The position numbers were made by a program, and so were the translations under genes. The notes under the pieces are model-generated. The model made no database searches. It was given only the letters and a program-made list of their open reading frames with translations, and was not told the DNA's origin. This document shows positions 26,991-60,565 of a stretch of 64,000 bases of DNA, piece by piece; position 1 is the first letter of the stretch, and every line of letters begins with the position of its first letter. The stretch lies in the IMG/VR virus record IMGVR_UViG_3300049043_000112, positions 1-64,000 of that record. The stretch is one strand, 5' to 3'.

Positions 26991-28714
26991 TCTTGTGTCG
27001 ATGAAGACACTCTACGGGAAAAACCTTTGACTTTTTCGAATTGTATGACACTTTCAAATCTGTCACGCATATCGGTCTTATGAGAAATCACAAAGATATT
27101 AGCATCTTTAATCACATAACGGATAATCTTCAGGAACTCATCAGTTCCGAATCCATCAAGCGATGAATCAAAGACCTCATCCATAATCAGCAGATTAGTA
27201 TTTACGGAGTTTTTGACTCGGGCAACTTCTCTCCAAGTGAAGAGAAGGGCAAGATCGATTCTCATTTTCTCACCCTCACTAAAAGAACTATAAGAAAAGT
27301 CTTCGTGAATGGGTGATTTTACCGTTTCGTTAAACTCTTCATCCAGATGGAAATTAATATAAAAATCCATCATCTGAAGATAACGATTCACCTGCTGATT
27401 TATGAACGGAAGATACTTCTTGATTATCTTCGTTTTAACGCCATCGTCCTTGAGTAAGGAATAGGCAAAATCGTAATAAACGATTTCTTCTTTTTCTTTG
27501 AAAGGTCTTCGAATGTTTTTTGGAGATTGGTTTGAAATTCTTCTAACTTCTCATGCTCAAGTATTTCTGTTTGCAAGGTTTTGGGTAATAGTTTGAACTT
27601 CATTTTCAAGATCTCGGATTTGTCGCTGGTTAAGTGATATCCGAGTATTGTTTTGAGAAATCTCATGGTTGAGTTTCGTAATCTCCTTAGATAGAACTGT
27701 GAATTGACGCTCTCTCTCCTGTTCTAACTTTATAGTCTCCTTAAGTTCTTGAAAACCTTTCTGGAGTTCCTTTGCCTTATTTTGAGCGTCTGCAATTCTA
27801 TTTAACCGAAACTCTTCTTCTATAGTCTGAGTACAGGTGGGGCAGACCGTATTTTCTGTGAAGAACTTATGTTCTTTGGTAATAGCAGATACTTTCTGAG
27901 ATATTTTACCCTTAAGATTGTTAAGCTTTACTAACTTATCACCAGCACCTATGACTTCTTCTTGATCTTTGGTGTATTTAAAAACTTCCTCTTCTATCTT
28001 GGCATTTTCGGTCATATAAACACCAACTTCGGTATCTAAATTGGCAATCTTTTCTTTGTTGGCATTTATATTGGCGTTACCACGATTCTCAAGTTCCTCA
28101 ATGAATTCTTGTTGCATCTTCATCTTGTCCTTAAGAGTTTCCTTCTTAAGTTCAAGAGATTTTACTTGGTCTTTCTTTTCACGAATCTTATCTTTAATAA
28201 GATTATTCATTGCAGAAAAAATACGAATATCCAAAAGGTCTTCAATTACTTCTCGACGATTAGAAGTAGTCAATTGCATAAAAGGTACAAAAGTACTACT
28301 CCCTAAAATTACAATCTGAGTGAAAGATTTGTAATTTACCTTTAAAATATTATCTTCAAGAATTCTTTGATTGGCACGGTCATCTGCTTCCTTGTGTAAA
28401 GGAACACCATTTACTTCAATATCAAAAACATTTGGTTTGATACCACGACGAACCAAATAATCACGACTATTAATTGAAAACTGAATTTCTACAAGACAAT
28501 CTTTCTCATTAGTCGTATTAACTAACTGAGGTTTGTTAATCTTTCGAAATGGTTTATTGAAGAGAACAAAAGTTAAGGCATCCAGTACTGTGGATTTACC
28601 AGCACCATTGGTTCCTATGATTAAGTTTGTATGATGTTTTTCAAAATCAACTTCGGTCCACTGATTTCCAGTTGAAAGAAAATTTTTCCATTTAATCTTG
28701 TGAAATACTAACAT
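26987..28714 (-). CDS. gp46: Recombination endonuclease SbcC/Rad50-like subunit, two indels (~27560, ~27495)
   Basis: GTNGAGKS, CPTC hook, FSEGEKMRIDLAL, LIMDEVFDSSLD. Confidence 0.95.
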
Positions 28715-28967
28715 TCTTAGGGGGAATTACGATATCGTCAGGAGTGATCACAGCATACTTGTAATTATAAGTCCTACACGTCTTTATGGCAAGCTCATCA
28801 TCAACTTCCACAACTTCCATTTCTTGTTCTTCTTGATCTTCAAGCATCAAAGCATAACGAGTAGCATCATCTTCTTCCTCAAACAAAAATAGAACCTTAT
28901 GACCATATTGGTCTTGAACTGCATATGCTCCGTCGTCTTTTCTGTCCTTAAGGGTAAGAAGAAACAT
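28692..28967 (-). CDS. Conserved hypothetical between gp47 and gp46
   Basis: DGAYAV...LFLFEEEDDATRYALML...YAVITPDDIVIPP. Confidence 0.75.
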   Translation of the reverse strand: MFLLTLKDRKDDGAYAVQDQYGHKVLFLFEEEDDATRYALMLEDQEEQEMEVVEVDDELAIKTCRTYNYKYAVITPDDIVIPPKNVSISQD

Positions 28968-30005
28968 TTACTCTACTTCGCAAGCTTGTTTATAAAGATC
29001 CTGAAAAATACCTTTGATAATGTTTTTATCAAATTCAAATTCTGATTCTTCAATATAGCGATTCAAAATTGAAAGTGTGTTTTCTGTTTCATCAATTTCA
29101 AACTCTTCATTCTCTTGAATTTCAAAGTTTTCAACAATCTTAAGTTCTTGAATACCAGCAGTATATAGTTTATCAATAAACTTTTCAAAATCTTTTGGTT
29201 TCGATTTTTTACGGACAATCACTTTTACAATCTTATTTTCATATTCGGTTGCATCAAATACCTGATAAGGAGTATCCTCATAATAAATGTTATAAAACAA
29301 TTTATAAGGATTGTTGATTGGAATATGAGTGAGGGTTTCTGTATCAAAGATATGAAATCCTCGCATATCATTCACATCAGTCCAATACATTTCATAAGGA
29401 TTTCCCAAATAGAAAATCTTGCCGTTGTCTGAACGAGTGTGATAATGCCCTGAAAATACTTTGGTAAACTTATCAAAAATGTTTGGGTCTGCTCCGTGTT
29501 CTTCCATAATCAGGTTTCGATTGACACGGAAACCTTGAAGTTCAAGGTGACCCATAGCAACCTTTGCTTTGGTCTTTTTAATTTGATTTAGCGTTTCATC
29601 ATAGTTCTCACTACAAATCCATGGCACCATCAAAATATTCAAACCACCAACTTTAATGGTTTGTGGAGAACTATATGTTTTAATGTTTGGATAAGTTTGA
29701 AGAAGCAAACTTGGAGAATTAACAGTATTAGTATTCTTGTAGTAGCAATCATGATTACCAACGATCATATGAACTTCATAATCTCGCAAATGTTCAAACA
29801 CAACTCTCTTAGACCATTCAAGACTTTGATAATCAATTGACTTACGACTATCAAAAGCATCGCCCATATGAATGACTGCCTCTACCCCATGTTCTTTCAG
29901 AGCAGGAAAAAATACATTCTTATAAAAGAGTTCAAAATGATCGTGGAGGTATTTTGAACCCTTTCTTGCCCCATAATGAGTGTCGGTGATGATTGCAATT
30001 TTCAT
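28968..30005 (-). CDS. gp47: Recombination endonuclease SbcD/Mre11-like subunit
   Basis: ITDTHYG, HMGDAFD, VGNHD, GHLE, SGHYH. Confidence 0.96.
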   Translation of the reverse strand: MKIAIITDTHYGARKGSKYLHDHFELFYKNVFFPALKEHGVEAVIHMGDAFDSRKSIDYQSLEWSKRVVFEHLRDYEVHMIVGNHDCYYKNTNTVNSPSLLLQTYPNIKTYSSPQTIKVGGLNILMVPWICSENYDETLNQIKKTKAKVAMGHLELQGFRVNRNLIMEEHGADPNIFDKFTKVFSGHYHTRSDNGKIFYLGNPYEMYWTDVNDMRGFHIFDTETLTHIPINNPYKLFYNIYYEDTPYQVFDATEYENKIVKVIVRKKSKPKDFEKFIDKLYTAGIQELKIVENFEIQENEEFEIDETENTLSILNRYIEESEFEFDKNIIKGIFQDLYKQACEVE

Positions 30006-30463
30006 AATGAACTCAAATAATTAATTGCATTTTCAAATAGAGAAATATCGTCATTTAAAAAACCAAGAGCACTATTACATTTTCCACATAAAAGTCCTCT
30101 CACCTCATTGGTTTTATGACTATGATCCACAAATAAATTTCCTTTTTCTTTTTGAAAGCAAATAGCGCATACACCCTTTTGCTTATCAAGCATAGCATCA
30201 TAATCTTCTAAAGTCAATCCATAGAGAGAAAGTTGTTGCTTTCTATTTCTAAGAATTTTTTCTTCTGGTGTTAAAGAATGGTAATAGGCGTTGTTTTTTT
30301 TATACACACTATCTTTATTTGCTCTTACCCATTTTTTTGTTTCTCCAATCTTAAATCTACGTTTTGAGTTTTCTTTAACACATTTAACACAAGGTTTATT
30401 TCCAGAAAAATACCTTTCACTATTTCCACATTTTTTGCAGGGTTTTCCAATAAAAGTATTCAT
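30002..30463 (-). mobile_element. Free-standing His-Me finger endonuclease (Endonuclease VII family), probable homing endonuclease
   Basis: YGLTLEDYDAMLDKQKGVCAIC...VDHSH...VRGLLCGKCNSALG; N-terminal CKKC..CVKC; own TATAAATA at 30486-30493; AT-rich. Confidence 0.8.
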
Positions 30464-30485
30464 ATATTTTCTATAATACTATTAA

Positions 30486-30493
30486 TATTTATA
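30486..30493 (-). promoter_or_regulatory. Late promoter TATAAATA
   Basis: Exact match, 23 nt upstream of the endonuclease ATG. Confidence 0.75.
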
Positions 30494-30505
30494 AAATAAT
30501 AGTAT

Positions 30506-31023
30506 TTAACGATTATTTCTATATTGAATATTATCTTTAATTGTGTTGTAATCGCTAGTGCTTCCAGCTAGCAACTGTCGTCAACCATCATAACCTTATC
30601 AAACCCAGTGCGTTCAATAATTTTAGTTTTAATATCTAACTGTTTCTTTTCTTTTTGAATTCTTCTTAGGAATGCATAGTGAATAATCTGAGTAAAATAT
30701 GCAAAAGGATTCTTTGACTTTTCAGGATCAAAGTTATGAATATATTGAACACAATTTTCAATTCCGTCAGAAATCATATCCTCACGGAACATATAGTTTA
30801 CAAAATTTGGTTTATATGAAAGATGAGTCGCAATCTTTAGAAAACATTCACCAAGGTAATTTGGAATGGGTGGTTTACCTTCCCAATGCTTACCACGATC
30901 TTCTTTGGTGGGTTTTCTATCATATTTTTGTTGAAAGGAATTTTCTACTTTAGAACGATAAACAATCATCGCTTCTAATAATTCCCTATTATTCACATAA
31001 TGTTCGGGTTTTTTCTTAGACAT
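30506..31023 (-). CDS. gp55: Late transcription sigma factor, -1 indel near 30575
   Basis: HYVNN, YLGECFLKIATHLS, EDMISDGIENC, AYFTQI. The corrected tail LAGSTSDYNTIKDNIQYRNNR* ends at 30506. Confidence 0.95.
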
Positions 31024-31039
31024 ACCATCGGACTCATTT

Positions 31040-31085
31040 ATTATAACTTTTGTTTATTATAACATACTTTTTAAAGGCTTGACAA
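31040..31085 (-). promoter_or_regulatory. Sigma70-type promoter for gp55
   Basis: TTGTCA-N18-TATAAT (31056-31061), plus a second TATAAT at 31040-31045. Confidence 0.65.
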
Positions 31086-31107
31086 CATTCAAAAATGTGT
31101 GTAGAAT
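31079..31107 (+). promoter_or_regulatory. Antisense sigma70-type promoter
   Basis: TTGACA-N17-TAGAAT on the + strand; no + strand gene follows. Confidence 0.65.
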
Positions 31108-31134
31108 CCCTTTGTTCCCGTTGAAGATAAAAAT

Positions 31135-31542
31135 CTAGCTTTCTTTAATTTCTTTAAAGATTCTTTCAAGTTTTTTGCGAGCATCTTCAACAGAAGCAAT
31201 ATAACCCATTTTAGATGAAGGTTTTACCTTACCAGAAGGATTATAAACATCTATTAAATCTTCATCTTCAATATAATCATTATAAATATTAATCAATTTT
31301 TCATCTTTAGTTTCTGTCATTGTAATAATTTTATCAAGTCTTACAATAAAAAAATCATCACTAGATAGTTCCATCCAAGATTTAACTTTAAGATGAGTCC
31401 CTTGATGATTATGAAAAGTTTTTATAGTGATTGGATTTTGCAATACAACTACAGGATCACCATCATTTTCATCGATTATGACTAATGATACTATTTCCTC
31501 TCCTGAAGTTAATTTAACTATTGCGTAAAACTCTTCTCCCAT
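31135..31542 (-). CDS. Conserved hypothetical (Sm-like)
   Basis: FYAIVKLTSGEEIVS...LQNPI...W...GYIASVEDARKKLE. Confidence 0.75.
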   Translation of the reverse strand: MGEEFYAIVKLTSGEEIVSLVIIDENDGDPVVVLQNPITIKTFHNHQGTHLKVKSWMELSSDDFFIVRLDKIITMTETKDEKLINIYNDYIEDEDLIDVYNPSGKVKPSSKMGYIASVEDARKKLERIFKEIKES

Positions 31543-33004
31543 TAGTTTTTTAGCGGAATGTTTACAATATCATAATTAAAGTTTTCTTCGTTATAAACTT
31601 TGATTCTTTCTATTAAGTGATTGAGTGTATAATTTTTTCTTGACTTATAACTGATATCATCGGCAATATCATATAGAGTTGCTTTTACTTTGTTTTCGCC
31701 TTTTCTGAGAACTCTGCCGATAGATTGGAGATTTCTAATTCTCGACTTCGATGGTGAAGCAAACACAACGTTATGTAAGTTACGTATATTAATACCGGTA
31801 GAAAAAGTCCCATAAGATGCTACGATAATTGCGTTATTTTCTTTTTCTGTAATTTCACGAACTTTTTCTCTTTCTTCAGTATCTACACCACCATGTACAA
31901 AGAATACGTGGCGATCATCCTGAATGCTATTATTTATGAGTTCGTATAAAGGTTGCCCGTGACCTTCTACTCTTGAAAATAAAATTAGAGTATTGCCTTT
32001 AAGATCAATAGCAAGGTTTTTAATGAACTTGTTTCTACGTTCGTGATTGATAATATACTGAACCTTATCTTCAAAAGTCTTAAACTTATTCGGTGGATGT
32101 TTCAATAGAAGAATATTAATATCTAACTTCGCAACGTGACCCTTCTGCATCAGTTCGTCAGTGCGAATGATTTTATATGAAGGTCCAAATAATCCCTCAA
32201 GAACCCACTTGTGCGTTTGTGTTCCGTCTAGCGTTCCTGTAAATCCAAAACGATACTTAGCATCTGAAAGTTTTGACATTATAGATACTAATGACTTTGA
32301 TTTAAACTGGTGTGCTTCATCTCCAACGACCACATTAAATCTTGAGAAATATTGTCGGGGAAGTTTGTAGATGGACTGCCAGGTTGTAATGATAACCTGA
32401 GAGTCCGTTTCTCTTTCTTTACCCGCATATATCTTGTGGCAAAATGAACCTACGTCCCACCCATAATCTGCAAAGTCTTTATACATCTGCTCTACAAGGG
32501 ATGTCGTTGGAACGACTATCAGAGTATTTTGCCCTTTCTTAACGTAATATCTCACAATCGCATATATCATCAGAGACTTTCCAGAAGCAGTTGGAGATAT
32601 CAACAACTTTCTATTGTGTTTTAAAGCGTCGTATACTCCCTCTAACTTGGTACTTACGGGGAGCATACTTGCTAATTGATGTAATATAATCTTTAACTCC
32701 TTCTTTTGAAATCATTTCATTGACTTCAAAAGGAAGACCATAGAACTTATTATTTGCAAACTCGTAGGTATATTCGTGATTTTCGCAAAATCTAATCAAT
32801 TTATCTAGAAGACCTACATAAATCTCACCTGCTTGAGGATTGAATAAACGTATTTTTCCATCCCAGTGTCTATTACGGAACTGGGGCATAAATTTTGCTC
32901 TGGCACGTCAAAGGTGAACTGGTCCTGAAGTTCATAATAGACGTGTGGTTCTGCCTTTACCTGAAGATATACCTCATTCTTTTTGATATAACCAAATGTG
33001 ACAT
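31542..33004 (-). CDS. uvsW: SF2 DNA helicase, two indels (~32905, ~32643)
   Basis: MSHLVISKKNEVY...WDGKIRLF; PTASGKS, GDEAH, GFTGT, QSIGRVLR. Confidence 0.95.
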
Positions 33005-33040
33005 ACGTTCATATCAATACAAAAATATTTATTGATAATA

Positions 33041-33062
33041 AAAAAGGGGTCAATTAAACCCC
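33041..33062 (-). terminator. Terminator overlapping the uvsY stop
   Basis: GGGGT-TTAATTG-ACCCC followed by T6. Confidence 0.55.
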
Positions 33063-33481
33063 GATTGGAACTTGTGCCATTCCAGAGCATTCTTTATTTG
33101 GAATGTTCTATTTGATATACACTTAATAACTTCTTCCAAGAACTTTAACATAATGTCATAGTATCTTATCTTGAGTTCTATCTTACTTAACTTCTCATCC
33201 CCATCCATATGCCTCTGTAGTGCCTCTTTGTCCCGAACTTTATACGGAAATGGATCTTCTTCATAAACCTCTTGTGGCGCCTTTCCCGTGTAATAGTTGT
33301 AGCGTTCAAGTTTCACTCGGTTGAAAGTTTCTCTTGCTTTTTCACGCAACAAGGTAATAGTATTATAAACTGTATAATACTTGGCATGTAGTTGAGGAAT
33401 TTTTAAAGACTCATCGTGTAAATTATCAGGATCGATGACAGAATCTTTCTGCCACATTTCCTGAATTTCATCAAGATTCAT
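33050..33481 (-). CDS. uvsY: Recombination mediator
   Basis: W.KDS.ID..NL..ESLKIPQLHAKY...R.FQIKNALEW. Confidence 0.9.
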   Translation of the reverse strand: MNLDEIQEMWQKDSVIDPDNLHDESLKIPQLHAKYYTVYNTITLLREKARETFNRVKLERYNYYTGKAPQEVYEEDPFPYKVRDKEALQRHMDGDEKLSKIELKIRYYDIMLKFLEEVIKCISNRTFQIKNALEWHKFQSGFN

Positions 33482-34005
33482 AGACCTGTTTTGATATTAT
33501 AGACAGTATACTTGAAAGTGACGTTTGCTGTAAAGTACTGAACATCAGTTAATGTGGAATCAAATTCTAAAGAAGTTAATGAAACTGGAAATAAATCTTT
33601 AAATTTTACAATTGCATTTGTATTATAACTGCTATCCAAAATATAAAGGCTACCATCACTAAATGCTTTTTTAGGGTCTTCTCCAGTACCATCAATTAAA
33701 TCATAGTACTGGCGTAAACTTTCTGGCGCCCCAAGACCAGTCATCCAATTATGAATTGCCATATAATTTACCATATCTTCATCAACAATAAATCTTAAAT
33801 TCAAATCGCCATATTGAAGTTTTCCTCCTGGTACATCAATATCTTTTAAGTATGTTGGTTGTTGTAAAGTATCAAGTGTAATTTCTGGAATTCTAGCAGA
33901 GTTGCAAAAGAATACTGCCTTTGGTTCTTTTGATAAAGTGAATTTGAACCCAACGGGAGATAAAAAATTTCTATTTTGAATTTGTTTTGAAAATGCGTTT
34001 GACAT
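33478..34005 (-). CDS. gp3: Tail completion / tube terminator protein
   Basis: NRNFLSPVGFKF, IPEITL, YGDLNLRFIVDE, FKDLFPVSL. Confidence 0.88.
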   Translation of the reverse strand: MSNAFSKQIQNRNFLSPVGFKFTLSKEPKAVFFCNSARIPEITLDTLQQPTYLKDIDVPGGKLQYGDLNLRFIVDEDMVNYMAIHNWMTGLGAPESLRQYYDLIDGTGEDPKKAFSDGSLYILDSSYNTNAIVKFKDLFPVSLTSLEFDSTLTDVQYFTANVTFKYTVYNIKTGL

Positions 34006-34006
34006 T

Positions 34007-34627: not shown

Positions 34628-34647
34628 TTAAACAGGGTACTTTTAAA

Positions 34648-34655
34648 TATTTAGA
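34648..34655 (-). promoter_or_regulatory. Late promoter variant TCTAAATA
   Basis: Immediately after the gp23 terminator, 21 nt upstream of the ATG at 34627. Confidence 0.65.
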
Positions 34656-34656
34656 T

Positions 34657-34680: not shown

Positions 34681-34701
34681 TCGATTGAGTTGTGAATTAA
34701 C

Positions 34702-37361: not shown

Positions 37362-37363
37362 AA

Positions 37364-43559: not shown

Positions 43560-45258
43560 TTAACGATAATCCCACATATAAGAACGATCACCATATTCAT
43601 CTAAATTCCAAACATCAGTTGTTTGCACTCCATTTTCTTTTGTTGCAAACATCCATCTATCTCCAGTTTCTTTTTCTATAATATCATCCATATCTTCAAA
43701 TCCATCAGAAATAAATCCAAATGGGGACATATCTTGTTCTATCTGATTTTTTTGTTCTTCATAAATTCTTTTACGAACATCATTGTCCGTCATCTCTTTG
43801 AAATAATCCTGAGCAACTAACCAAGAGAAAATTACAAGACACATTGCTAAGTCATCATTACAACCTTCTTCTGCTTCAAATGAATTATGACGTTGTGCAA
43901 ATGTAGTAAGTTCTGATATAATATCATAATCAACTGTTAATAACTTATCATCTTCTAGTAATGTTTTTAAATTAGAGCATCCTAATTTCTTAACAGATGC
44001 AGTCATTCTTACGCCCAATTGAGATTTCTTTCCACTAAATCCAGAACCAACCAATTGACCAGCTCGTCCTCTTATTGCACACATTAAAACATTATCATAC
44101 TCTAAATCAAAGTGCATAATATTTGCTACTTGATTCTCCAATATCATTAACTTCTATTAATAACCAAGCATCATTGTAACCTCTTGCTACTTCGTTAATA
44201 ATACTTGGAAATAGCATGGGTTTAATTTCGTTATTGCGATATTTTGCTACAACTTTATACGGAAAGTTTGTAATATCAAAAACAATAAATGCAGAGTAGT
44301 CATTTCCAAGTCCACGAGCAACATCAACTGTCATCAAGTAGTTGTGTTCTTCAATTGGATTTTCATAAATGTCTAAACCAGCGTTTCTCTTAATTGGGTC
44401 TTCATAAACAAGATTTCTAAGTTTTGCTGGATTAATCAGCGTATTAACAGAACCTAAGAATTCACATTCAAATTCTACCTTGAATTGTTGTTCTGAAGTG
44501 TTTGCAATTGTCTGTTCTTTCCAGACAGCATCTCTACCAGGCACTTCAGACCAATGAACATCAGTCGGTACATATTCATTTTTACCGCGTTCGGAATCAT
44601 GCCACATGCGGTAAAAATGGTTCATACCACGTGGTGTTGAAACTATGATGACTTTTGTGCTTTGTCCAGAAGAAATAGTAGGATAAACAGAGGCAAAGAA
44701 GTCATCAGCAATGTGATTCGGGATGAAAGCGAACTCGTCAAGAAAGATGACATTATAGGATCCGCCTCGGACAGCAGACGAAGAAGTAGAGTTAGATGAA
44801 ATCTTGGAGCCATTTTCTAATTCCAACGATCCTTTGTTCCAGGATATAATACCCTGTTGCATCCACTTTGGTAAATTCTATAAGCAAGTTGTAGTCTCCC
44901 AAGTAGGTCTCTAGCAGTAGATGCTTTGTTTGCTAGAATAGCTATATTTACATTATCATTAAATACCGCATAATGTAACAAATATGAAACGCAAGTTGTA
45001 GATTTACCCGTTTGGCGGGGCATCTTACAAATATTAAATCTGTTCTTATGGAAATTATGAATTAGTTTCTCTTGAAACGGATACATCTCTAAAAGGAACA
45101 AGACCGTGATCCAGAGAAACAATTTTAATGTAGTTTCTCGCAAAATAAACAGGATCTTCTTTACACTTTAAGAACTCGATAATTTGTTCTTCAGTGAATT
45201 GGATTTGCGTATTTGCTTTTTTTAAATTTGGATTACCAAGATATACATTATCACTCAT
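43560..45258 (-). CDS. gp17: Terminase large subunit, three indels (~45090, ~44880, ~44135)
   Basis: MPRQTGKSTT, IFLDEFAF, STPRG, VDVARG, DDLAM, spread over four track pieces. Confidence 0.96.
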
Positions 45259-45263: not shown

Positions 45264-46577
45264 TTACCTACTAATTTCTTCCCAGTCTAGTGAAGCAAAA
45301 ACATCAGCACCAGCAGTATCGGATGCAACTACTAGTGTTAATTCATAAGCAGTTCCAGTCAGTCCATTTCTTTCTAATTGAAACTTAAATAATGCTTCTT
45401 TTAGAATATCAACAGATGAGGAAGATTGGTTTGCTGATGAGAAAAATCCAGATGCTAGAATTCTTCCACCACTTACAGTTCCTCCATCAATTTTATATTC
45501 CACAGCACTATCAGCGCCCGCACTTACCCAAGTACCACCACTAGTAGTTGCAGATGCTCTTACCTGCCAGTTATATTGTGGACCATTTCCAGTACCCATC
45601 AAGGAAAGTGCTGTCAAAATAACAATTGCATCTAATCTATTTGGAGAAGATTTTAGACGAATAGAAATAACGGGATAATAAGTCCCTGCAGGAGTTGGTA
45701 AATCTACTGGTGCTGTGATTGGAGTATTTACTGCTTGTTGCAATCCACGCAATTCATAACCACCTTCCGAAATTACAGAAGAACACACCTGTTTCATAGT
45801 ACTACTACCTGTAGTAATACCAGTATTTGCAATCTCATATCTTAAAGGAAGAGATGCTGTTGTAATATAAGTTGATTGGATATAGTTTGCGTGATGGAAT
45901 GAATGTGCGTGAATAAACTTCCCATCAATCACAAATCCCATTCTTACTGTACCAAGACCCAACCACTTAATATCCATCCAAAGAATTTGTGCTTTGGTGA
46001 TATCTAATGTAATACCAGAAACCCCAGTACCATCTAACTTATCAATATTCCAATCATTTTGTGCAACTGAGGTTTGAGTACCAGTAGATAAACTTCTTTC
46101 TACAAAGTAAGGTGTTGTATTATTGATTTCAAAATACATTCCATTATCAGCACCAAAATATCCTACTCTTTGACGAAGGTTTTGTTTTGGTGTAGCGGGA
46201 ACAAAGGTATTTAAAACAAGTAAAGATTTGCCTGGTTGATATGAGAATGTCTTTGTGGTCTCTCTAATTACAGAGCAACCAGCAGTAGTTCCAATACCAA
46301 TATTAATTAATCCTTCAGTAGTTGCAAATCCAACTGTAGAACCAGTTCCTACAACTAAACTTTCCCAGAGATTATTGTCTCTATATCTGTGAGAACTATC
46401 AAATAATGTAAGTGGATTTGATACTCTTGTTCTTCCAAAAGCATCTGGATTTACACTTACAGGAAATCTATTGATATTATCTACAACATTTCCATCCCTT
46501 GTCGCTATCAAAGGAACTTCAAAGAGTGTACGCTCTTGATTCAAATAATCTTGAGTATTCTTATTCCACTGTGCCAT
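45264..46577 (-). CDS. Hypothetical protein, probably structural (beta-rich)
   Basis: DAFGRTRVSNPLTLFDS, YQPGKSL, QRVGYF, WLGLGTVRMGF. Confidence 0.65.
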   Translation of the reverse strand: MAQWNKNTQDYLNQERTLFEVPLIATRDGNVVDNINRFPVSVNPDAFGRTRVSNPLTLFDSSHRYRDNNLWESLVVGTGSTVGFATTEGLINIGIGTTAGCSVIRETTKTFSYQPGKSLLVLNTFVPATPKQNLRQRVGYFGADNGMYFEINNTTPYFVERSLSTGTQTSVAQNDWNIDKLDGTGVSGITLDITKAQILWMDIKWLGLGTVRMGFVIDGKFIHAHSFHHANYIQSTYITTASLPLRYEIANTGITTGSSTMKQVCSSVISEGGYELRGLQQAVNTPITAPVDLPTPAGTYYPVISIRLKSSPNRLDAIVILTALSLMGTGNGPQYNWQVRASATTSGGTWVSAGADSAVEYKIDGGTVSGGRILASGFFSSANQSSSSVDILKEALFKFQLERNGLTGTAYELTLVVASDTAGADVFASLDWEEISR

Positions 46578-46893: not shown

Positions 46894-48619
46894 TTAGTTG
46901 CAGTTCCAACGACGAAGGGCTTTGTTAATTCTTGAATCTGGATCTCTTGCAGTTTTAGCAGAAGTTAGTTTGGATTTCATTCCGGACATACGTCGGCAGA
47001 AGTTTGCACGACGCTTTGCTCTTTTACCAGTTGGTTTCTTTTCGGTTACAGCAGTTTGTAACTTAGAACCTGGATTCTCACGTCGATAAGCGTCTACTGC
47101 TTTTTGACTAAGACCATCAGTTTTATCCTGACGATTTACTTTTTGCCAATCTTCCATAAATTGACTAAAAGTTTTATTTTCTTGAACTCTACCCATAATT
47201 TGATCAATCTGCTGCTGTTGTTTTTCATTTCTTTGTTTAATTTTTTCAGCAGTTACTTTTGCTTTATCATATACCATTTTACCTGCCAGTGCAGTTCCTG
47301 CTGCCAGTCCAGCACGAATACCCAATCCAATCAGAGGATTTTCATTTAATTCATTAGACTCTTTCATTTCTCCACTATCTACATAATCTGCTGCAGTATC
47401 AATATAATCTGCTGCTTTAGTAATTTTTGATTGAACCCAAGCCTCAATATTTCCTTCTCCCTTCATTTTTTTACGAAGTCTTTTTGCTGCAGAAATAATT
47501 GTAGAAAGTTCAGAGCGAGCCATTGAATACTCATGATCATAAGACTTCAGGAAAATTTCCAGGATGAACAGTTGCGATATTATATTTTAATTGGTTTGTT
47601 GTTAATGCAGATGGTCTAGAAAACATATCCCAATACTTAGATCCATACTTACATTCATCACGAGTTTCATCTTTTTTACATTTAGGGCAATATCTAATCA
47701 TTCCTTGCTCCTCTTTTACTGGTATGCAATTTGGAACCAATTTTTTACCTTTCTTTTTCATTCCTTCTTCCTTATACCCATCCCAACAATCTTCTGATTT
47801 TGTTCCCCAATTTGCAGCACCAACTTTACGACATTTGACCAATGCTCCTGAAGCATATGCACTTGGCCAGACATCATATCTTGACTTAACTTTTTGGTAA
47901 CAGGCATCTTTTTTACCACTACCTTTACCTGGTTTATCTTTAACTTCTTGTAAATCCATTTCTTCAGTTCTTACGTTAGTTGGTTTTGCTCCACCAGTTT
48001 TTTCTGGTTGATTAGGATCTAGACGATTTTTTCTTCTTCTTGCCTTTTCCTCTTCTTCTGGAGATAAATTTGCTGCCATTTTAGAACTACCGCATTTTGG
48101 TGTAGAAGTTTGACCTGGTTGGCGAGCACATGGTTTTCCTGCATATTTGCCTCCAAGTTGAACCCAACCTTTTTTTCCATCAGAAGACTTTGATTTGCCA
48201 AACCAGTCATGAAGACCTTCATCACCAGAAGTTGTTTCTTCTTTTACATCTTTGAACTTTTTATGATGCTTTTTAGCATCAGATTCCATTTTTTTCAAAC
48301 GAGTATAATAATCTGGAATTTCATCAAGATGTTGAAGAGCAATATCAGTTGCTAAGTCTTTATCCTTTGTATGCTCATGTTCAATTGGAATACCCATTTC
48401 AAGTTGCTTCTTTACAAAAGAAACTTCAAGACGATGTTTTTTTGCAATCTGTTCAACCGATTTATGAGATTTCAATTCGTGCATTTCATTGAAAGGAGAT
48501 TTTGATTGAGTTGATTCACCTTTTGCTCTTTTTTTACGAGCAGCACAGTGTGCTTTTTGAGAAAATCCCTAAGGACTATCACAGTTTATTGATCTTTTGT
48601 ATTTGTCAGACCAACTCAT
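46894..48619 (-). CDS. Modular basic/Cys-rich late protein (~574 aa), in-frame TAG at 48569-48571 and +1 indel near 47547
   Basis: MSWSDKYKRSINCDSP*GFSQKAHC is in frame with 47537..48484; FPE-SYDHEYSMARSEL joins 46894..47523; TCTAAATA at 48643-48650. Confidence 0.7.
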
Positions 48620-49857: not shown

Positions 49858-51248
49858 TAAAATGTACCAAATGGATTTGACTCTGAAAAATCTATAATAT
49901 TGTCCGCTTCAGTTTCAATTTGTTTATTTTCACTATATTTATCATATTCATCCCACTCTTCAAATGATGAGACTGCATACCTTGCAGATGATGCTGCTCC
50001 AATAATAAGTTCCCCTGGATAAAATCCTTTAATTGTCGCTCCAATACTTACAATAGAAACCTTAAGTACATTAGTATCTTTATCCCAAGACTTAACTCTT
50101 GCGGTCGTATAAGACCTTGTTCCGGTAACAATTTCATTAAATATGTAAGTTCCAATTCCAGAAATAATCGATGGAGATTGAATACTTACAGTAGGTGCCT
50201 GTGTATATCCAATTCCTGCATTAGAAATACGAATATCAGATACTTGCTCACTGGAATTTATGGCGGCAATTCCAATAGCAGTTTGTCCAGTTCCTACAGA
50301 TCCCACAATTGTTACTGTTGGAGTTTCTTTATAACCATTTCCATTATTTGTTACAGTAAAGTTTATAATTCCATTCGCAACTGTTTCTATGGAACAAGTT
50401 GCAATTGCACCAGCACCACCGCCACCAGTAATCTGAATTGTAGGTGCTACAGTGTACCCTGAACCAGCGTTAGTAAGCAGGATTTGACTTACAGACCTAA
50501 CTCCACCAATTGCTGAAGTAATCGCTACAGCAGACGCATTAGTGCCTCCTGCAGGGGCAGTTGATATAGAAACAACGGGGTTTGATGTGTACCCGTATCC
50601 ATCATTATTCAAATAAATTTGTCTGATATATCCTGTTCCTATTGTTGCTGTTGCTGCAGCCGTTGTACCAATACCAATTAAATTCAAAGTTGTAATATAC
50701 CCTTCATTTTGAATTGTCTTATCAATTTCATCAATTGAAGTATCGATAACTTCATCCTTATATTCGAAGAGTTCACATTTTAGTTCATAGACATATAATT
50801 TACCCAATTGATAAAATGGTTGTTCATGCTCTACAAATTTAACTTCAAATAATCTTTGACCAAGTGGAAAATAAATTAAATCTCCTTCACGAGGTCTTGA
50901 TGCTAATTCAATTTCTGGATCATTTTCATCTAAAAAGGGGGCAATAAAATCTTCATATCTTTCTCTTGATATGACTAAACTTACTTCATCTTTCAAACTT
51001 ATTCCAAATTTTGTTAAAAGATCTCCCTGCCCACTGTATCCTTCATAGTTATTAATATACGCTTCAATAGCGTAGTTATCATCAAATTTAGATGATGAAA
51101 TTTCTCTTAAAATAGTTTCCCTTCTAACAAATTTTCTTGGAATATAGATAACTTCAACCCCATAAATTTTAAGCTGCTCATTAATCAACTCTTGAACGAG
51201 TCTTTGTTCGTTTGGTGATCCTTGAAGAAAAAAGGGATTAAGTGCCAT
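49857..51248 (-). CDS. gp14: Neck protein with an internal repeat insertion
   Basis: MALNPFF, GVEVIYIPR, LASRPREGDLIYFP, FSESNPFG; four GxGY-x3-P-x-V-x-I repeats. Confidence 0.9.
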   Translation of the reverse strand: MALNPFFLQGSPNEQRLVQELINEQLKIYGVEVIYIPRKFVRRETILREISSSKFDDNYAIEAYINNYEGYSGQGDLLTKFGISLKDEVSLVISRERYEDFIAPFLDENDPEIELASRPREGDLIYFPLGQRLFEVKFVEHEQPFYQLGKLYVYELKCELFEYKDEVIDTSIDEIDKTIQNEGYITTLNLIGIGTTAAATATIGTGYIRQIYLNNDGYGYTSNPVVSISTAPAGGTNASAVAITSAIGGVRSVSQILLTNAGSGYTVAPTIQITGGGGAGAIATCSIETVANGIINFTVTNNGNGYKETPTVTIVGSVGTGQTAIGIAAINSSEQVSDIRISNAGIGYTQAPTVSIQSPSIISGIGTYIFNEIVTGTRSYTTARVKSWDKDTNVLKVSIVSIGATIKGFYPGELIIGAASSARYAVSSFEEWDEYDKYSENKQIETEADNIIDFSESNPFGTF

Positions 51249-52978: not shown

Positions 52979-52992
52979 CTATTTTTAGAGAC

Positions 52993-53368: not shown

Positions 53369-56300
53369 TACGCTAGGGCAATACTTCTAAGATCTCTAAA
53401 CCTTGGAGCATATGCTTGTGATCTTCCTGACATGACGAGTTTAATTGTATATCCAGTGAAACTTCCAAGATTGTTAGCACTAAATTCATATTCTAAAAAT
53501 TAATCCTTTAAGCTTGCAGGAACAAACACATCTGGAAGTCCACTGTTTTTGGATGGATCAACAATATCCAAATATCCGTCTTGATTATTGTCAATAGTTA
53601 AATTATTGTATCCAGGGAATAGTTCAAATGCTTGACTTACTTCACTCGAATCGGGTCTAATTAAACTATAAAGAACTCTAAAATCTGCAGTTGAATCTCT
53701 ATAAGCACTTAATATAACTTTCAGAGATGTTGCTGGTTGTTGCAGTTTTACGGTATTTGAAACATAAATTGATGCATGTGGATCACCAATAATGTTATTA
53801 ACTCTATTATCTAAAGTATAATCTGCAATTGGAGAATTTAATCTGTTACTTATAAGTTGTGCAGAAGACTCCTGCCAGAAAATAACAGGAGAAACGTTTT
53901 GATCGGTTGTTGATAAATCAACTTTAACGGTAAACGATTTATTTCTCAATACAGATCCAAGATATGTTTGCTCGTTAATATTTGAGCATACAATTCTAGT
54001 CGAATTTAGATTATTTGCAACTCCTATTTCTACAGGTTCATAACCTAAATCTACAAAAGAACTTTCAGTTCCATTTACACTAGTTCCAGATATGGTTCTT
54101 ATTTGAGCAAGACTAGAAGTTACTGCAGAAGGATTGACAACTGATATTTGTGGAATAATGGTATTAAACTGAATGTTTTCGGAAGATCTTACTTCAGTTC
54201 CGCCGCACAACGCATTGGAATTAAATGATAACTGAGGAGCACTAGTAATTGATCCATCTGTTGATCTATTAGTTACATTAGCATCAAATGCAAATCTATC
54301 AACTTCAATATAGTAATTATCAATATCAATGCCAGTATCGCTAATATCATGTGTTTTGTTAATTCTTCTTAAGGATACTCCACCAAGTTCATACTTATAA
54401 ACTTGTGTATTGGTTGGATAAGTTAGAACTAGCGTGGAATCAATACCTCTAGTAATTCCATTTAATGTACCACTTCCTACAGAAGTATATTTAATAATTT
54501 CATTTTCAATCTTAACAAATCCAGGATTTGTTGCGCTTACAGTAAGACCTTCAAAAGTATTGAAGTTAGATGTAGAAGCAACACTAATTGTCGTGTTTGT
54601 TGATGTAATTGGTTGTGCAAGAGATGTGGGTATGATGTCAGTAATTGCATTTGAAATAGTTATCTTGTTGGTATTCGCATACATTCCATGATTAAAGTGA
54701 TTTACTCTAAAGAAGTTTCCAGCGTTAATACCACCAATTGCAGTTGATGAGAGGACACTTGTACCAGCAATTGAAGTGGCATTTCCAGAAGTATCATAAT
54801 AAACTAAGGTTGAAATACCTGCCGTTGTGAAAGAATTCCCTTGAACATTTGAAAGGTATAATGTATCAAGACCTGTAATAGAGTTAATTGTAATTCTTGC
54901 GTTTCTTCCAGACACTGAAGAAACAGAAGATGTGACAATTCCAACAACATCACCAACAGAATATCCATTTCCTGGACTTACAATTGTCGCAACACCTACA
55001 ACACCACTAGTAGCAGTGATGTTCAGAGTCAATCCTGTTCCATTACCAGTGATTGCGTATGTTGAAACTACACCATTTGAGTAATTTGTTCCACCAGTGG
55101 TTATTCCAATTGTTGCAACAGAACTTCCAGTACCAACAATATAGCCATTAAGTATATGGAGTTCCAACTGAAGAAACTTTTCTACCTGTAGTTAAGATAC
55201 CGATATTTGTTGCTGAAGTTGTAGTTGTAATTCCAACTTTAAGTTGTCTGGGTAATAAAGTGAATGGATTTGAATCTAATTTTGGAACATATCCATTACT
55301 TTCGTTTAGGGTTGGATTATGGAAGAATGCACTTCCTGTAGAAGAAACAAATTTAGATTTATACAGTTTAAACTTTAAATCTTGATATTGATTTGCTGTC
55401 CATATAGATCCATTTTGTGATTTGAATAGACTTCCTAAAGCAAACTGTCTTGAATATCGAATGCTTTGTGAGTCTGGTAAGGTTGAGGTTTCAATAGTCT
55501 TTTGACCCATTTCAGCAATCCAAACTTCATATTGAATCACTTTGGGGTGCAAGAAGAACAATTGCATATTCTAATCCTGGTGCAAGGTAAATAGGATGAT
55601 CAAATGTAACTTTTGTTGCAACCGACGCATTTTTTGAAATTTGGATATCACTTGGTTTTAGTGTTACTGGATTTCCAAGAATTTTTGTTGTTGGCGTTCC
55701 TAGTTCAACGGTTCTAACTTCAACAGTAAGTGGTGCATTGCCAGGATCTTTATTTGCAAAATACAAATCAACTGCAGTTAAAAACGCACCATTAACGTCT
55801 TCATTTGGAGTGTTTCCATTTAAGTTGTCTGTAGATGCACCAACAGTAAATGACTGCGCTAATGGATCAACATAATAAATTGTTGTTGTAGATGTAATTG
55901 TTCTTTGTTTTTGCTGCCAAGTTCCTTCAGACTTATAAATTGTCTCTCCACTTGAAATCAGATTACTTCCAGGAAGAGGAACTTCGTTAGTTGAACTAGA
56001 TGTCAACTTGTAAACTTTAGATCCTGTTGCAATTCTAATCGCAGGAGTTGGATTTGTATTTGGATCTTTGAGGAAAAATGCTCCTGCTAAAAATCCATTA
56101 GAAATCACTAATTAATCTAAGATCTTTTACATAAGCAACTGCACCGCTTGTTTGCCCAACAAGTTTCATACCCAATGCTAAATATCCAGAATACAAACCT
56201 TGTGCTTCAGAACATAAAGATTCCGTATCAATATTTAAAACCTTAGATGATGCACTGTAGGACGCTGGAATATTTTCTGTAGTCGAATATGGGTTTGTCG

Positions 56301-59300
56301 TATATGTAACTGATGGATCACTATATGGACCTTCTTTATGATTTGCTTTTGCAACTCTAAAACTAATTGCCTGACTTAAAACTCCAGAAGTAGTATTTAC
56401 ATATCCAAAAACTTTTTCACCGACTTGGAAAGATGATGAAGCACCGTAGTTTTGAAGAGTTAAGTCCGTAGCAATTTCTACAAGTTTTGGAACAAAATCA
56501 ACCAATCCATTTCCATCTAAGAATTGGTAATATCTAGTTAAAGGTCTTAAGTTTACTGCTTTAAATCCAGTATTTCTGGATCTCATATATAACTCTTTTC
56601 CAGTTGCAACAACTTGATCAACGGTTGAAGTGCTAGTGCTTTGCCCAACAACTTGATAACGTCCAGTAGCATACAACCATACCCAATTTGTTTGGTTAAC
56701 ATTTACGTCTGGAAGACGAATAGTTCTAACCCAACTATCACTTGCTGGACTTAATTTAATAGTTCCACTATAAGAGACAATATTGAATGGATTAACGTTT
56801 TCAACCTTAGTTGCAAATAACTGTTCAATCCAACCAATTGAATTATATTTTAATGTGAGAATTTCTCCAGTTTTTTGAACATTTGAATCAAATAGAGTAA
56901 AGTTTTGGGATAAATCTAATGTCTCATCTGTAACACTTTCGGCAGAAACTGGTTTAAGATTTATTGTATTTTTACTAGTTTGTGTTATTAATTCATCATT
57001 ATCAGTATCTACTTCAATTTTAGATATTTCTAAATTAATTAAATCTGTATTTTTAAAGTCGTCAACAAAGAATCCTGTTTTAAAGCGACTTAATCCTTGT
57101 GCATCACGTATTTGGAGTGTTTGTGTATTAAGTTCTAATAAAGATAAAGAAGTAACTCTTTCTAAATTGTTGACTCGATTTTCAATCTTGCCAATATCAC
57201 GCATCGTATATCTCTTATTATCCACAAGAGTTATACCTGCGTCTTTAGGATTGTATAAGTATGGTGGTAATGTGATTGTAGCAATTTCTATGGAATCGCT
57301 TGGTTTTGCTGGTTCTTTTGGTTGTACTGCTGGAGTTCCTTGAACCACTGCAAATTTGCCATTTTTATCAATGAAAAGTTTATCAATTCTTCCAAGATAA
57401 AACTGATATCCAATTAAAGCACTTTCATTGGGGGACATTAAAATTTTTGGTTCTGATCCAAAAGATCTTGAAGAAAAATCAAAAGGTGATGCTGAAGTGC
57501 TTGTAAATTGAGAAACTCTTGGTCTAAAGTCTAGAGTATCAGAAGATCTAATATTATTTTTACCAATTAATGGAATGTCTGAAGTAAATCTTTCGCCATC
57601 ATAACTATTAACAGTAAATACATCTCCGGTATCACTTGTAGGTACAGAATAATAGTCAAAAACTACTAAAAGTTGTCTTGATGGAGCACTTTCTCCAGAA
57701 TTTCGAACAATTTTTGAATAATCATAATATTGAATCTTTTTGCCCTTTATCTAAGGTATATTTTGTTGTTATATTTTTAAAACTTCCAAGAGTAATAGTA
57801 GAAATTGTAGTTTGAATGTTAGATTCTTCAAAAATTACCTGTTCTCCTTCAGAGAGAGTATTTCCATTAAGATAAACAATCCCTAAATTGTTTGTGGAAG
57901 GTTTTGAAACAATTCTGGCGACTGCGTTACTTGTTTTTCCAATAATATTTTCTCCAATAATTGCATTACTATCGACATTTACTACAGAACTAAATGAAAG
58001 TCTAGTTGGAACTGGAGCATTTGTATCAAGAGATTCATAAATTGCAATTACTTTAACAACATCTGGATAATTTAAACTAATTTCTTCGTCCTGAACTCTT
58101 AATCCATAATATTGATTATAAATTAACCCATCATTAACAGAAGTGTTTACACCAACACCAGATTGTGGATTTTTAGACAAAGTTATATTAATAGTTTTAC
58201 TTCTATTAAACTGCTTGACTTTGCTTTGAATAGAATTTTTTACAAAAGTGGCGTTAATTACTGAAATGGATTTGTTGGAAATATTTGTAAATGTTACTTG
58301 AGAAGAATTGCCACTTAAAGCAACTTTATCTGAAGTTAAATTTTCAATTGTTCCATCAGCATAAAAAATTGAATATCTTTCTTCGTCAAATGCTTCAAAT
58401 CTTGCAGAAGATGTATTAATTCCAAGATTAAAATTACTGGTGCTGACTGTAAGAGATCCACCAGAAGGAGTTAAAGTTCCTGTTGATTGTGCAGTAAACG
58501 TAATTGTTGAAGTGCTTAAATCTGTGGAAGCAATATTTGAATCTGGAAGTTGTGCATACAAAAATCCCTTTTCATCGTTTAGAATTTTTGTTTCACCTAG
58601 AGAGTATGATCCACTATATTGAGAAGTAGGTAATGCACCATCACAAACACCGTTTACACTAGTAACACTAGCAAGTGTAAGTGATAATCCAGTAGAAGAG
58701 ACAGAAGCAACTCTATTATATGTTTCAGTAGATATTCCTGCTCTTTGATATCTAACTATATTATCTGTTTTAATTCCGACAAAACTAAATGGGGAAGAAA
58801 CTGTTGCTGTGCTAACTCCAGCACTTGCAGCAGTAATTGTGATTGTTTCTGGTCTTAAAGTTTTACTTAGTTGTGTATCTGCTATAAAAGCAGTACTAAA
58901 TCCTGATATAGAAGTTGGTTGATGAACCAATCTAACATCCTCTATACTATAAACCTTAATAGAAGATATAAATCTAGAGTAATTTTCTGATCCATTGATT
59001 AAAATCTGTTCACTAACTGAAAATGTTCCAGAAGTTTGACTTAAAAGAACAGCAGACCCACTAATGGAAGCAACATACCCACTTGCACCGCTACTTTTTC
59101 CTTTTATGAAAGAAGATGTTGGTAATTCAGTTGAAGTTAAAGATTGATTTAAAGTTAATTCAGTATAAGTTTGAACATCATATAGATACAAGTCCCAGTT
59201 AGTAGTTTGATTTGAATATGCAGCATCAGTTACGTTAAATGTATAAACCCTTGCAGAACCAACGGTTGAACCTGCAGCAACAGTTGTACTGTCTTTTCTT

Positions 59301-60565
59301 CTACCTTGAAAATATACGATTCCTTTTTGAACTGGAGCACCAGATATATTATTAACTCTAACTAAATTCCCCATTTCAAAAGGAATATTTACAGAAGAAA
59401 CTGTATTAGTTGTTCTTGGTTTTGAAACATCTAAAATTTCAACTCCAGTTTTTTCTACATCATATCCTCTCACATAAGCTTTACCTGGAGACATTTTAAA
59501 GCACATCAAATCATCTGATGGTGTGTTTCCTTGCTCTGTTTTTTCTGTATCAAAGAATAAACCATCATTACCAATTCTATTATTTAATGAATTGTTTAAT
59601 GAAAATTGAAAAGGAGTAACGACATAATCTCCAGATTCATCATAAGTTCTTTGTGCTAAGTAATCTTTTATGTTTGAATATGTAGATTTGGTTTCAATCT
59701 TCTTAATTGCGCCATTTTGTACTCTAAGTAACTCTACAAAATCAATATCATTATTATCAGTTAAAAGTCTTTTTGTTAAAGTTAATGAAATTTTAAACCT
59801 ATCCGCTCCAGGGGCAGCATAGTTTGTAAAACCTTTTGCATTATCATACAAACTAGAATCATCTCTAGCAGTGATAATTTCTTCATTAATTCTTAATCCT
59901 ACTCTATAAGAAGGAGTATTTGTATAATAATCTAAAATAATTGTTTGTTTTGGAACTCTTACGAAAGTTCCTCTAATAAAATATACACCTTCACCAATTG
60001 ATGCTGCAAATCCAATCGAAGTTGAATTGGAAATGATTGTGGTGGCAAAAGGTGTTCCAGATGTAATTGTAGTAGATTGATATGTAATATTCTCTTCAAT
60101 GTATAAAGTTTCATTATCTTTGAAAGAACTTACCTCAAAATTAGAATCTAGAGCTAAGATATTTTACATATAAGGTTACATATTCTACATCAGAATTTGG
60201 AAGTTGAACTAACTGAATATTTGCAGTAACTCCAGAATCGGTTCCTATAACTTTTTTACCTACAAATTTTTCAATGTAGTTTGATATATCAACACCGTAC
60301 TGTAATTGATTTAATTTAACTGCATAAAACTGCCCATCGTATGCAATATTTCCAGGGATCACCATTGATCCGTCTTTGAAAATATGACTTCCGAACGATT
60401 CTACTTGATCTTGTAGAATTGATTGTAATGTGTTAAGTTCACGAGCTTGAATTGCCCTTCCTGGATTAAATAGGACCTTGTAATAGTTCTTATCCCTTGC
60501 ACCCACATTCACTTCCGAAAAATCATCAAAATATGGATTTATATTGAGATTAGTTTTTTGACCAT
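53368..60565 (-). CDS. Giant virion structural protein (DUF4815-type, ~2400 aa), broken by about six indels and an in-frame TAA at 53500-53502
   Basis: NLNINPYFDDF...YYKVLFNPGRAIQARELNTLQ; NYAAPGADRFKI; DNKRYTMRDIG; FKTGFFVDDF; DPLAQSF; DLKFKLY; ends APRFRDLRSIALA*. The pieces join with 1-nt corrections. Confidence 0.85.

What the first reader, a model, noticed from the sequence alone, without database searches (positions are those of the whole stretch)
27555..60565. Second error motif CTCA/TGAG: Glu-to-Lys swaps and indels at the same base
Seen: T-AAG where my recollection of homologues expects T-GAG (Glu) at 30597 (gp55), 32066, 32081, 32540, 32655 (uvsW), 45968 and 50759 (gp14 CELFEYKDE). 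Frameshifting indels occur at the same motif: T-AGAG (32643, 45090), G lost (44880), TTGAG (27560), TGAAG (47547), CTCTA (60150), C lost before TCA (60561). Substitution, insertion and deletion at one motif is what an ambiguous base call produces, not a mutagen. No enzyme in this window explains CTCA, so it may report an unknown host or phage modification. The expected residues are inference.
Basis: partly seen in the sequence, partly recalled or inferred. Interest (0 to 1): 0.6.

Follow-up and report, generated by a model that had tools for sequence, protein, structure and literature searches.

The report
Assembly errors clustered at TGAG sites
The Glu-to-Lys swaps and frameshifts at CTCA/TGAG are sequencing errors in a noisy long-read assembly of a freshwater cyanophage, clustered at this four-base word as tightly as at the methylated GATC site, so they probably mark a second, unproven DNA methylation motif.

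Summary
The window is the first 64 kb of a 236-kb T4-like cyanophage contig (JGI 3300049043).
- short-read contigs from four public runs;
- a second, independent 236-kb assembly of the same phage (JGI 3300045937, the 'twin');
- up to 83 relatives.

Site 60150 is a real frameshift, but its motif cannot be assigned.

The two assemblies differ at 63 places in about 58 kb. Seventeen of these lie on CTCA/TGAG (3.2 expected) and 12 on GATC (1.6 expected). In both motifs the miscalled base is the G just 5' of an A (G>A), or there is a 1-base indel at that G. Thirty-five of 38 substitutions are transitions, which is the nanopore signature. About 12% of minus-strand TGAG sites are wrong in at least one assembly, and two sites are wrong in different ways in the two.

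The changes are therefore artefacts, not mutations. Their cause is most likely a base modification at TGAG, best guess N6-methyladenine. Besides a Dam-family gene in the window, the genome holds a second adenine methylase (PF05869) at 97.4-97.9 kb, a candidate writer. The modification itself is not shown, and a modification-independent basecaller bias is not excluded.

The parts
27559..27560 (-). One extra base next to CTCA (window CTCAA). It splits the gp46/SbcC-like gene.
   Evidence: Left out in X1, X2, X5, X6 and in the twin. 12/20 relatives show a gap.
27742..27742 (-). TGAG>TAAG (Glu>Lys), present in both assemblies.
   Evidence: X1, X2, X5, X6 read C. 22/22 relatives have C.
30597..30597 (-). 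TGAG>TAAG (Glu>Lys) in gp55, present in both assemblies.
   Evidence: X2, X5, X6 read C. 17/18 relatives have C.
32066..32066 (-). TGAG>TAAG (Glu>Lys) in uvsW, window only.
   Evidence: X1, X2, X5, X6 and the twin read C. 35/35 relatives have C.
32081..32081 (-). TGAG>TAAG (Glu>Lys) in uvsW, window only.
   Evidence: X1, X2, X5, X6 and the twin read C.
32540..32540 (-). TGAG>TAAG (Glu>Lys) in uvsW, present in both assemblies.
   Evidence: X1, X2, X5, X6 read C. 29/44 relatives have C.
32642..32643 (-). Window has CTCTA (one base inserted; splits uvsW). The twin has CTTA at the same site.
   Evidence: X2, X5, X6 lack one base. Twin comparison. 32/46 relatives show a gap.
32655..32655 (-). TGAG>TAAG (Glu>Lys) in the uvsW N-terminal part, present in both assemblies.
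   Evidence: X2, X5, X6 read C. 33/46 relatives have C.
44073..44073 (-). TGAG>TAAG read as ATG>ATA (Met>Ile) in the large terminase, present in both assemblies.
   Evidence: 55/55 relatives have C on the + strand.
44879..44880 (-). One base of CTCA lost (window CTA). Frameshift in the large terminase.
   Evidence: The twin has CTCA and an intact 565-aa terminase. 54/64 relatives insert C.
45089..45090 (-). Window has CTCTA (one base inserted). Second frameshift in the large terminase.
   Evidence: The twin has CTCA.
45968..45968 (-). TGAG>TAAG (Glu>Lys), window only.
   Evidence: The twin has C. 83/83 relatives have C.
47547..47548 (-). Window has CTTCA and the twin CTCTA. Both are one base too long and split a gene that is a single 609-aa ORF in S-SRM01.
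   Evidence: 8/16 relatives show a gap.
50759..50759 (-). TGAG>TAAG (Glu>Lys) in gp14, present in both assemblies.
   Evidence: 14/15 relatives have C. The twin shares the T.
56462..56462 (+). TGAG on the + strand read as TAAG (Ser>Leu in the minus-strand gene), window only.
   Evidence: The twin has G.
60142..60159 (.). One-base surplus in both assemblies, breaking the giant baseplate gene. The stretch holds TAGAG and AGCT, so the motif cannot be assigned.
   Evidence: The gene is intact in 80/80 relatives.
60560..60561 (+). TGAG on the + strand read as TGA (one G lost) in codon 2 of the giant baseplate gene, in both assemblies.
   Evidence: L179 and L180 have TGAG. S-SRM01 begins MAQKTNLN.
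5340..5340 (+). TGAG on the + strand read as TAAG, window only.
   Evidence: The twin has G.
9554..9555 (-). One base of CTCA lost, window only.
   Evidence: The twin has CTCA.
18453..19300 (-). D12-class Dam-family adenine methylase gene with a DPPY motif. This is the likely writer of the GATC mark (the first error motif). It is itself broken twice, at GAATC, in both assemblies.
   Evidence: PF02086 matches on two frames. Three-frame reading. Same split in the twin.

Best explanation
Shown: the window is a long-read consensus with roughly one error per kilobase. About 30% of the window-versus-twin differences sit on the asymmetric word TGAG (CTCA on the other strand), and another 19% on GATC.

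Inferred: the reads were nanopore-type, and the phage DNA carries a modified base in TGAG. The best guess is N6-methyladenine on the A. The current signal of the neighbouring G is then miscalled as A, doubled or dropped in reads of that strand. Where such reads outvote the others, the consensus is wrong.

The mark could be written by the phage's second adenine methylase (PF05869 type, genome 97376-97942, outside the window) or by a host enzyme. The Dam-family gene in the window would account for GATC.
For: Error status:
- Short-read contigs and the twin carry the intact motif.
- Errors differ between the two assemblies, and at 32642/3 and 47547/8 each assembly is wrong in a different way.
- Core genes (terminase, portal, uvsW, gp55, the baseplate giant) are split here. 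By contrast, 240 related loci totalling 2.23 Mb hold only 6 candidate frame changes.

Motif specificity:
- 17 of 63 differences lie on TGAG/CTCA, against 3.2 expected.
- Of the 24 G/A differences followed by A, 14 are in GAG (12 of them TGAG) and 8 in GATC.

Parallel with a methylated motif:
- GATC shows the same error type, G>A just 5' of the A, and a comparable share of sites affected. A Dam-family gene is present.

Platform signature:
- 35 of 38 substitutions are transitions.
- G>A excess at methylation motifs, in only a subset of sites and with strand bias, is described for nanopore data and not for PacBio (10.64898/2026.01.14.699587). Motif errors in consensus are described in PMC6591954.

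Candidate writer:
- A 188-aa ORF matches PF05869 at 69.6 bits against a cut-off of 28.1.
- It is absent from S-SRM01.
Against: - No direct evidence of any modification. Raw signal, kinetics and an amplified control are not on hand.
- The sequencing platform is inferred, not on record (one search found no paper on the samples).
- Nanopore reads have a G>A bias even on amplified DNA, so a context-specific bias without a mark is possible.
- No paper in the held library reports a TGAG/CTCA methylation motif.
- The specificity of the PF05869 enzyme is unknown, and it scores below the equivalog cut-off of TIGR01712 (63 bits against 97).
- The errors are skewed towards TGAG on the minus strand (21 of 176 sites against 6 of 156; p = 0.008). 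A plain two-strand vote does not predict this.
Confidence: 0.6

Rival explanations
1. The same artefact, but without any modification. The basecaller or polisher confuses TGAG with TAAG for reasons of sequence context alone, at low coverage.
For: - A G>A bias persists in amplified DNA on nanopore platforms.
- Only some TGAG sites are affected, with a slight preference for TGAGG.
- The orientation skew could come from software.
- No methylase is tied to the motif.
Against: - The enrichment matches that of GATC, for which a methylase gene is present.
- TGAG holds about 5% of all GA steps (my estimate from the motif counts) but half of the G>A-before-A errors.
- No flank within 12 bases matters, although a pure k-mer effect should depend on flanks.
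- No report of such a generic error was found.
Confidence: 0.3
2. The artefact is caused by a bulkier or non-methyl modification at TGAG, for example a 7-deazaguanine in place of the G, or a modified cytosine on the CTCA strand.
For: The miscalled base is the G itself (C on the other strand), and indels occur at that base.
Against: - No TGT/DpdA-type gene.
- No C5 methylase.
- No N4/N6 methylase of PF01555.
- Short-read contigs read the site normally.
Confidence: 0.06
3. Real sequence variation: mutations by a TC-specific cytosine deaminase, or true pseudogenes.
For: C>T in a TCA context looks like a deaminase signature.
Against: - Indels occur at the same base.
- Essential genes are broken.
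- Two assemblies of the same phage disagree site by site, and are twice wrong in different ways at the same site.
- Near-identical short-read contigs carry the intact motif.
Confidence: 0.02

Closest known systems
Methylation-motif errors in nanopore consensus sequences (Dcm CCWGG: PMC6591954; GATC, CATCTC and others: bioRxiv 10.64898/2026.01.14.699587)
   Same: - Errors pile up on a short motif.
- G>A (C>T on the other strand) dominates.
- Only a subset of motif copies is affected.
- There is strand bias.
- The errors mimic SNPs and frameshifts.
   Different: - The motif here, TGAG/CTCA, is not one I found reported.
- Methylation at it is not independently shown.
- Indels are as prominent as substitutions.
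Orphan adenine methylases of phages (T4/T2 Dam of the D12 class; T1/VT2/HP1-type 'phage N-6-adenine-methyltransferase', PF05869/TIGR01712)
   Same: The genome encodes one of each class. There are two adenine methylases and two error motifs that both centre on a GA step.
   Different: From my own knowledge, characterised members of both classes recognise GATC. A TGAG specificity would be new, and it is not tested here.
m4C RGCY, CCWGG and GGWCC marks of marine Myoviridae-like viral genomes (PMC8919816)
   Same: Large aquatic myoviruses with several methylases and several motifs. RGCY is strongly avoided here and is weakly enriched among the errors.
   Different: Those motifs are palindromic cytosine marks. 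TGAG is asymmetric and was not reported there.

Membership tests
Modification-linked nanopore consensus error | Errors concentrated on a short sequence motif | tested here: met
   17 of 63 assembly differences against 3.2 expected; top of all 4-mers. 5/60 conserved CTCA sites changed against a 0.7% background.
Modification-linked nanopore consensus error | The changes are absent from short-read or independent data of the same DNA | tested here: met
   X1, X2, X5, X6 contigs and the twin assembly carry the intact motif.
Modification-linked nanopore consensus error | Transition-dominated spectrum, G>A above all | tested here: met
   35 of 38 substitutions are G/A or C/T. 24 of these 35 are a G/A difference followed by A. 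Compare.
Modification-linked nanopore consensus error | The data are native-DNA nanopore reads | not testable with these tools
   No metadata or paper for JGI 3300049043 / 3300045937. The platform is inferred from the error spectrum.
Modification-linked nanopore consensus error | The motif is independently shown to be modified (kinetics, signal, amplified control, LC-MS) | not testable with these tools
   Only contigs of the runs are served. No raw signal is available.
PF05869 phage N-6-adenine methylase (the candidate writer) | Match above Pfam's gathering score | tested here: met
   69.6 bits against 28.1, residues 15-127. Genome 97376-97942.
TIGR01712 phage_N6A_met equivalog | Score above the curated equivalog cut-off | tested here: not met
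   63 bits against 97.05. Related, but not the same function by NCBI's criterion.
Type I (bipartite) methylation motif | A second conserved half-site at fixed spacing | tested here: not met
   No position within 12 bases of 18 error sites differs from the background of all 345 TGAG sites (best p = 0.066 at +1). No PF02384 gene.
Deaminase-type mutational signature | Substitutions only, present in all data from the same DNA | tested here: not met
   Indels at the same base; absent from short-read contigs; discordant between assemblies.

The most novel reading that the evidence does not exclude
The phage (or its host) methylates the A of the asymmetric four-base word TGAG. The writer is the small PF05869-type orphan methylase at 97.4-97.9 kb, whose relatives (70-92% identical) are widespread in lake and ocean viromes. 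That would assign a new, very short non-palindromic specificity to a common family of aquatic phage methylases. It would also show that error motifs in noisy long-read viromes can be mined as a free methylome readout.
Probability: 0.3. Interest if true: 0.5.

Novelty: new member of a known kind. Interest (0 to 1): 0.35.

Why it matters
Practical. This IMG/VR record and its twin carry at least 25 false frameshifts in the 64-kb window, plus many false amino-acid changes. These break the terminase, portal, uvsW, gp55, the Dam gene and the baseplate giant. Gene calls, protein clusters and any evolutionary reading of 'Lys for Glu' from this record are unreliable until it is polished.

Biological. 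If the cause is a modification, the error pattern is an indirect sign of a second, asymmetric methylation motif in a freshwater T4-like cyanophage. It also suggests which two methylase genes to test.

Tried and rejected
- Direction-of-change test against the nearest isolate, S-SRM01 (75% identity): TGAG>TAAG 42 against 24 in reverse. Suggestive only, because divergence is too high.
- Searches for closer relatives in IMG/VR and metagenome contigs gave at most 88% nucleotide identity. They served for conservation, not for base-level truth.
- The decisive references came from read laying and from an exact-protein look-up that found the twin.
- Family searches of the whole 236-kb genome were negative for PF01555, PF02384, PF00145 and PF01702.
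- PF05063 was also negative, but its control rang nowhere, so that result says nothing.
- The PDB sequence search for the second methylase gave only spurious ubiquitin matches.
- Paper searches for the sample ids, and for TGAG/CTCA as a methylation or nanopore error motif, found nothing usable.
- I looked for other noisy long-read relatives to serve as a control for a generic TGAG error. None exists among the 240 loci.
- A bipartite extension of the motif was rejected.
- TGAG is only mildly under-represented (O/E 0.79), so there is no restriction-avoidance signal.
- I did not fetch more of the twin record than the part facing the window, about 68 kb. I stopped because the fetch from genomes states a limit on how much of one metagenome record a session may hold.

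Full report
**What the window is.** The window is bases 1-64000 of a 236,016-bp virus record, JGI metagenome 3300049043, contig Ga0506816_0818. It is a T4-like cyanophage with nearly all genes on the minus strand. The nearest isolate is the freshwater Synechococcus phage S-SRM01, at about 75-80% nucleotide identity. S-SRM01 ORFs laid on the genome show 33 changes of frame inside conserved genes. By contrast, 240 related loci totalling 2.23 Mb show 6 in all. The giant baseplate gene, which is in at least five pieces here, is intact in 80 of 80 relatives. The record is therefore a noisy assembly.

The sequence at all 14 coordinates is as described. The seven substitutions are all GAG>AAG at codon position 1 of the minus-strand ORFs.

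I laid contigs of four public runs on 27500-33499. X1 is lake water and 99+% alike. X2, X5 and X6 come from other studies and hold relatives. Every run that covers 30597, 32066, 32081, 32540 and 32655 reads C where the window has T. The runs also lack the extra base at 27559/60 and 32643. Four of X1's nine single-base differences from the window are these T>C changes at CTTA.

An exact-protein look-up then found a second assembly of the same phage from another sample, JGI 3300045937, contig Ga0496538_0224, 236,046 bp. I call it the twin. It faces window positions 1-27583 and 30485-62637.
- The twin has the intact motif at 32066, 32081, 44879, 45090 and 45968, with an intact terminase and uvsW.
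- It shares the window's version at 30597, 32540, 32655 and 50759, where relatives and short reads have C.
- It carries its own errors at other CTCA/TGAG sites: 11066, 19304, 19534, 20040, 32553, 32975 and 62234.
- At 32642/3 and 47547/8 the two assemblies are wrong in different ways.

At 60561 two 86%-identical relatives have TGAG where both assemblies have TGA. S-SRM01 begins the protein MAQKT, which needs the lost base. At 60150 a one-base surplus is real but cannot be pinned to TGAG, because the stretch also holds AGCT.

**Is it more than chance?** The window and twin differ at 63 places in about 58 kb. With no motif assumed, CTCA/TGAG is the most enriched 4-mer: 17 observed, 3.2 expected, and none of 2000 simulations reaches it. 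GATC follows among the intact motifs: 12 observed, 1.6 expected. CTTA/TAAG and TTAA also rank high, as the by-products of these errors. The two sites where neither assembly keeps the motif bring the TGAG count to 19.

At columns conserved among relatives, 5 of 60 CTCA sites read CTTA in the window, against 0.7% of all conserved columns. Of 38 substitutions, 35 are transitions. Of those 35, 24 are a G/A difference followed by A: 14 in GAG (12 of them TGAG) and 8 in GATC.

At least 25 frameshifts in the window come. By my own tally, not a scripted count, about seven sit on TGAG and about eight on or next to GATC. GATC often appears as GAATC.

**What it is.** These are errors, not biology. Indels and substitutions hit the same base. 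Essential genes are broken. Two assemblies of one phage disagree site by site. Short reads carry the intact word.

The spectrum is the one described for nanopore data and not for PacBio: G>A and its complement, a subset of motif copies, and strand bias. In native DNA the excess is concentrated at methylation motifs (also for Dcm).

In TGAG orientation, the affected base is nearly always G2, just 5' of the A. It is read as A, an A is inserted before it, or it is dropped. The same holds for GATC, where the G before the methylated A is read as A. The simplest reading is therefore a modified A in TGAG, by analogy with Dam sites. This is an inference.

**Candidate enzymes.** The window holds one D12 Dam-family gene at about 18453-19300 on the minus strand, with a DPPY motif. 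It is itself broken twice at GAATC in both assemblies.

The rest of the genome holds one more methylase. It is a 188-aa ORF at 97376-97942 (minus strand) that matches PF05869 at 69.6 bits, and TIGR01712 below its cut-off.
- Neither gene is in S-SRM01.
- The second gene has over 500 relatives at up to 92% identity (70-92% among the 120 listed) in aquatic metagenomes, some beside other methylases on Tara contigs.
- It matched no cyanophage isolate.
- No C5, N4/N6 (PF01555), type I/IIG (PF02384) or TGT/DpdA gene was found.

Two adenine methylases and two GA-centred error motifs fit together, but which enzyme writes what is untested. A host enzyme is equally possible.

**What remains open.**
- The platform and the modification are not shown.
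- A context-specific miscall without any mark is not excluded. I could not reach other contigs of the same runs as a control.
- The errors are skewed. TGAG on the minus strand is hit at 21 of 176 sites, and on the plus strand at 6 of 156 (p = 0.008). Among the unbiased differences the split is 15 against 4 (p = 0.03). An excess of the more error-prone TGAGG on the minus strand explains part of it. Strand-skewed long-read depth, or a consensus step that treats forward and reverse reads differently, could explain the rest. One search reports a similar one-sided pattern for CATCTC.
- No flank within 12 bases matters, so there is no bipartite motif.

**Verdict.** The reading of it as an artefact is supported. 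The reading as a modification is likely but unproven. The kind of thing is known; the motif is, as far as the held literature shows, not reported.

Noticed in passing
window 1584, 3470, 9276, 24146, 43511, 44134, 52098, 53901, 60009, 62147, 62412; GAATC at 19006, 19072, 55535, 57733, 56102: GATC is the other error motif. G>A or C>T occurs at its outer bases in one assembly or the other, and an extra A (GAATC) is shared by both assemblies. 12 of 63 differences lie on it, against 1.6 expected.
   Followed up: yes
window 18453-19300 (-): The Dam-family (D12, DPPY) methylase gene is split into three frames in both assemblies, by two GAATC insertions at its own GATC sites.
   Followed up: yes
G000:C1:97376-97942 (-) = L259:1315-1881: Second adenine methylase (PF05869), next to a CP12 gene. 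It is absent from S-SRM01 and common in aquatic viromes at 70-92% identity. Its specificity is unknown.
   Followed up: partly
whole genome; window 3103, 9533, 13265, 18274, 51173, 30574: RGCY words (GGCC, AGCT, AGCC/GGCT) are among the most avoided 4-mers (O/E 0.16-0.27), and are also avoided in S-SRM01. CATG and CCGG are avoided too. Assembly differences at RGCY number 5 against 1.95 expected (p about 0.05). RGCY m4C is reported for marine Myoviridae-like genomes. This is possibly a third, host-written mark.
   Followed up: partly
JGI 3300045937 Ga0496538_0224 (L168, L172, L174, L175): The same phage was assembled independently from a second sample: same orientation, start shifted by about 7.7 kb, 236,046 bp. 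It differs at about 1.1 sites per kb and has its own set of false frameshifts (portal, MazG, nrdA).
   Followed up: yes
window 27500-51000: All 14 TGAG-type errors in this stretch have TGAG on the minus strand, and none of the 57 plus-strand TGAG sites is hit. Elsewhere the orientations are mixed. The cause is unknown.
   Followed up: partly
window 30574, 36814, 39444, 55148: Frameshifts shared by both assemblies that lie on neither motif (AAGCTG, ACG^GC, CACCT^CTC, CCATTAAG). The same AAGCTG context recurs at 51173.
   Followed up: partly
window 10762-10763, 10883-10886 versus L170 (Logan contig of SRR17230300): A 906-base short-read contig is near-identical to the window. It agrees with the window at three places where the twin has insertions. 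It reads CTCA where both long-read assemblies read TTCG, and CAATC where they read AGATC. Whether these are variants or shared errors is not known.
   Followed up: no
window 40253, 4343: Differences next to CCGG: the twin has CCTGG, which breaks its portal gene, and the window has lost an A after TCCGG. There are too few cases to call a motif (2 against 0.5 expected).
   Followed up: no
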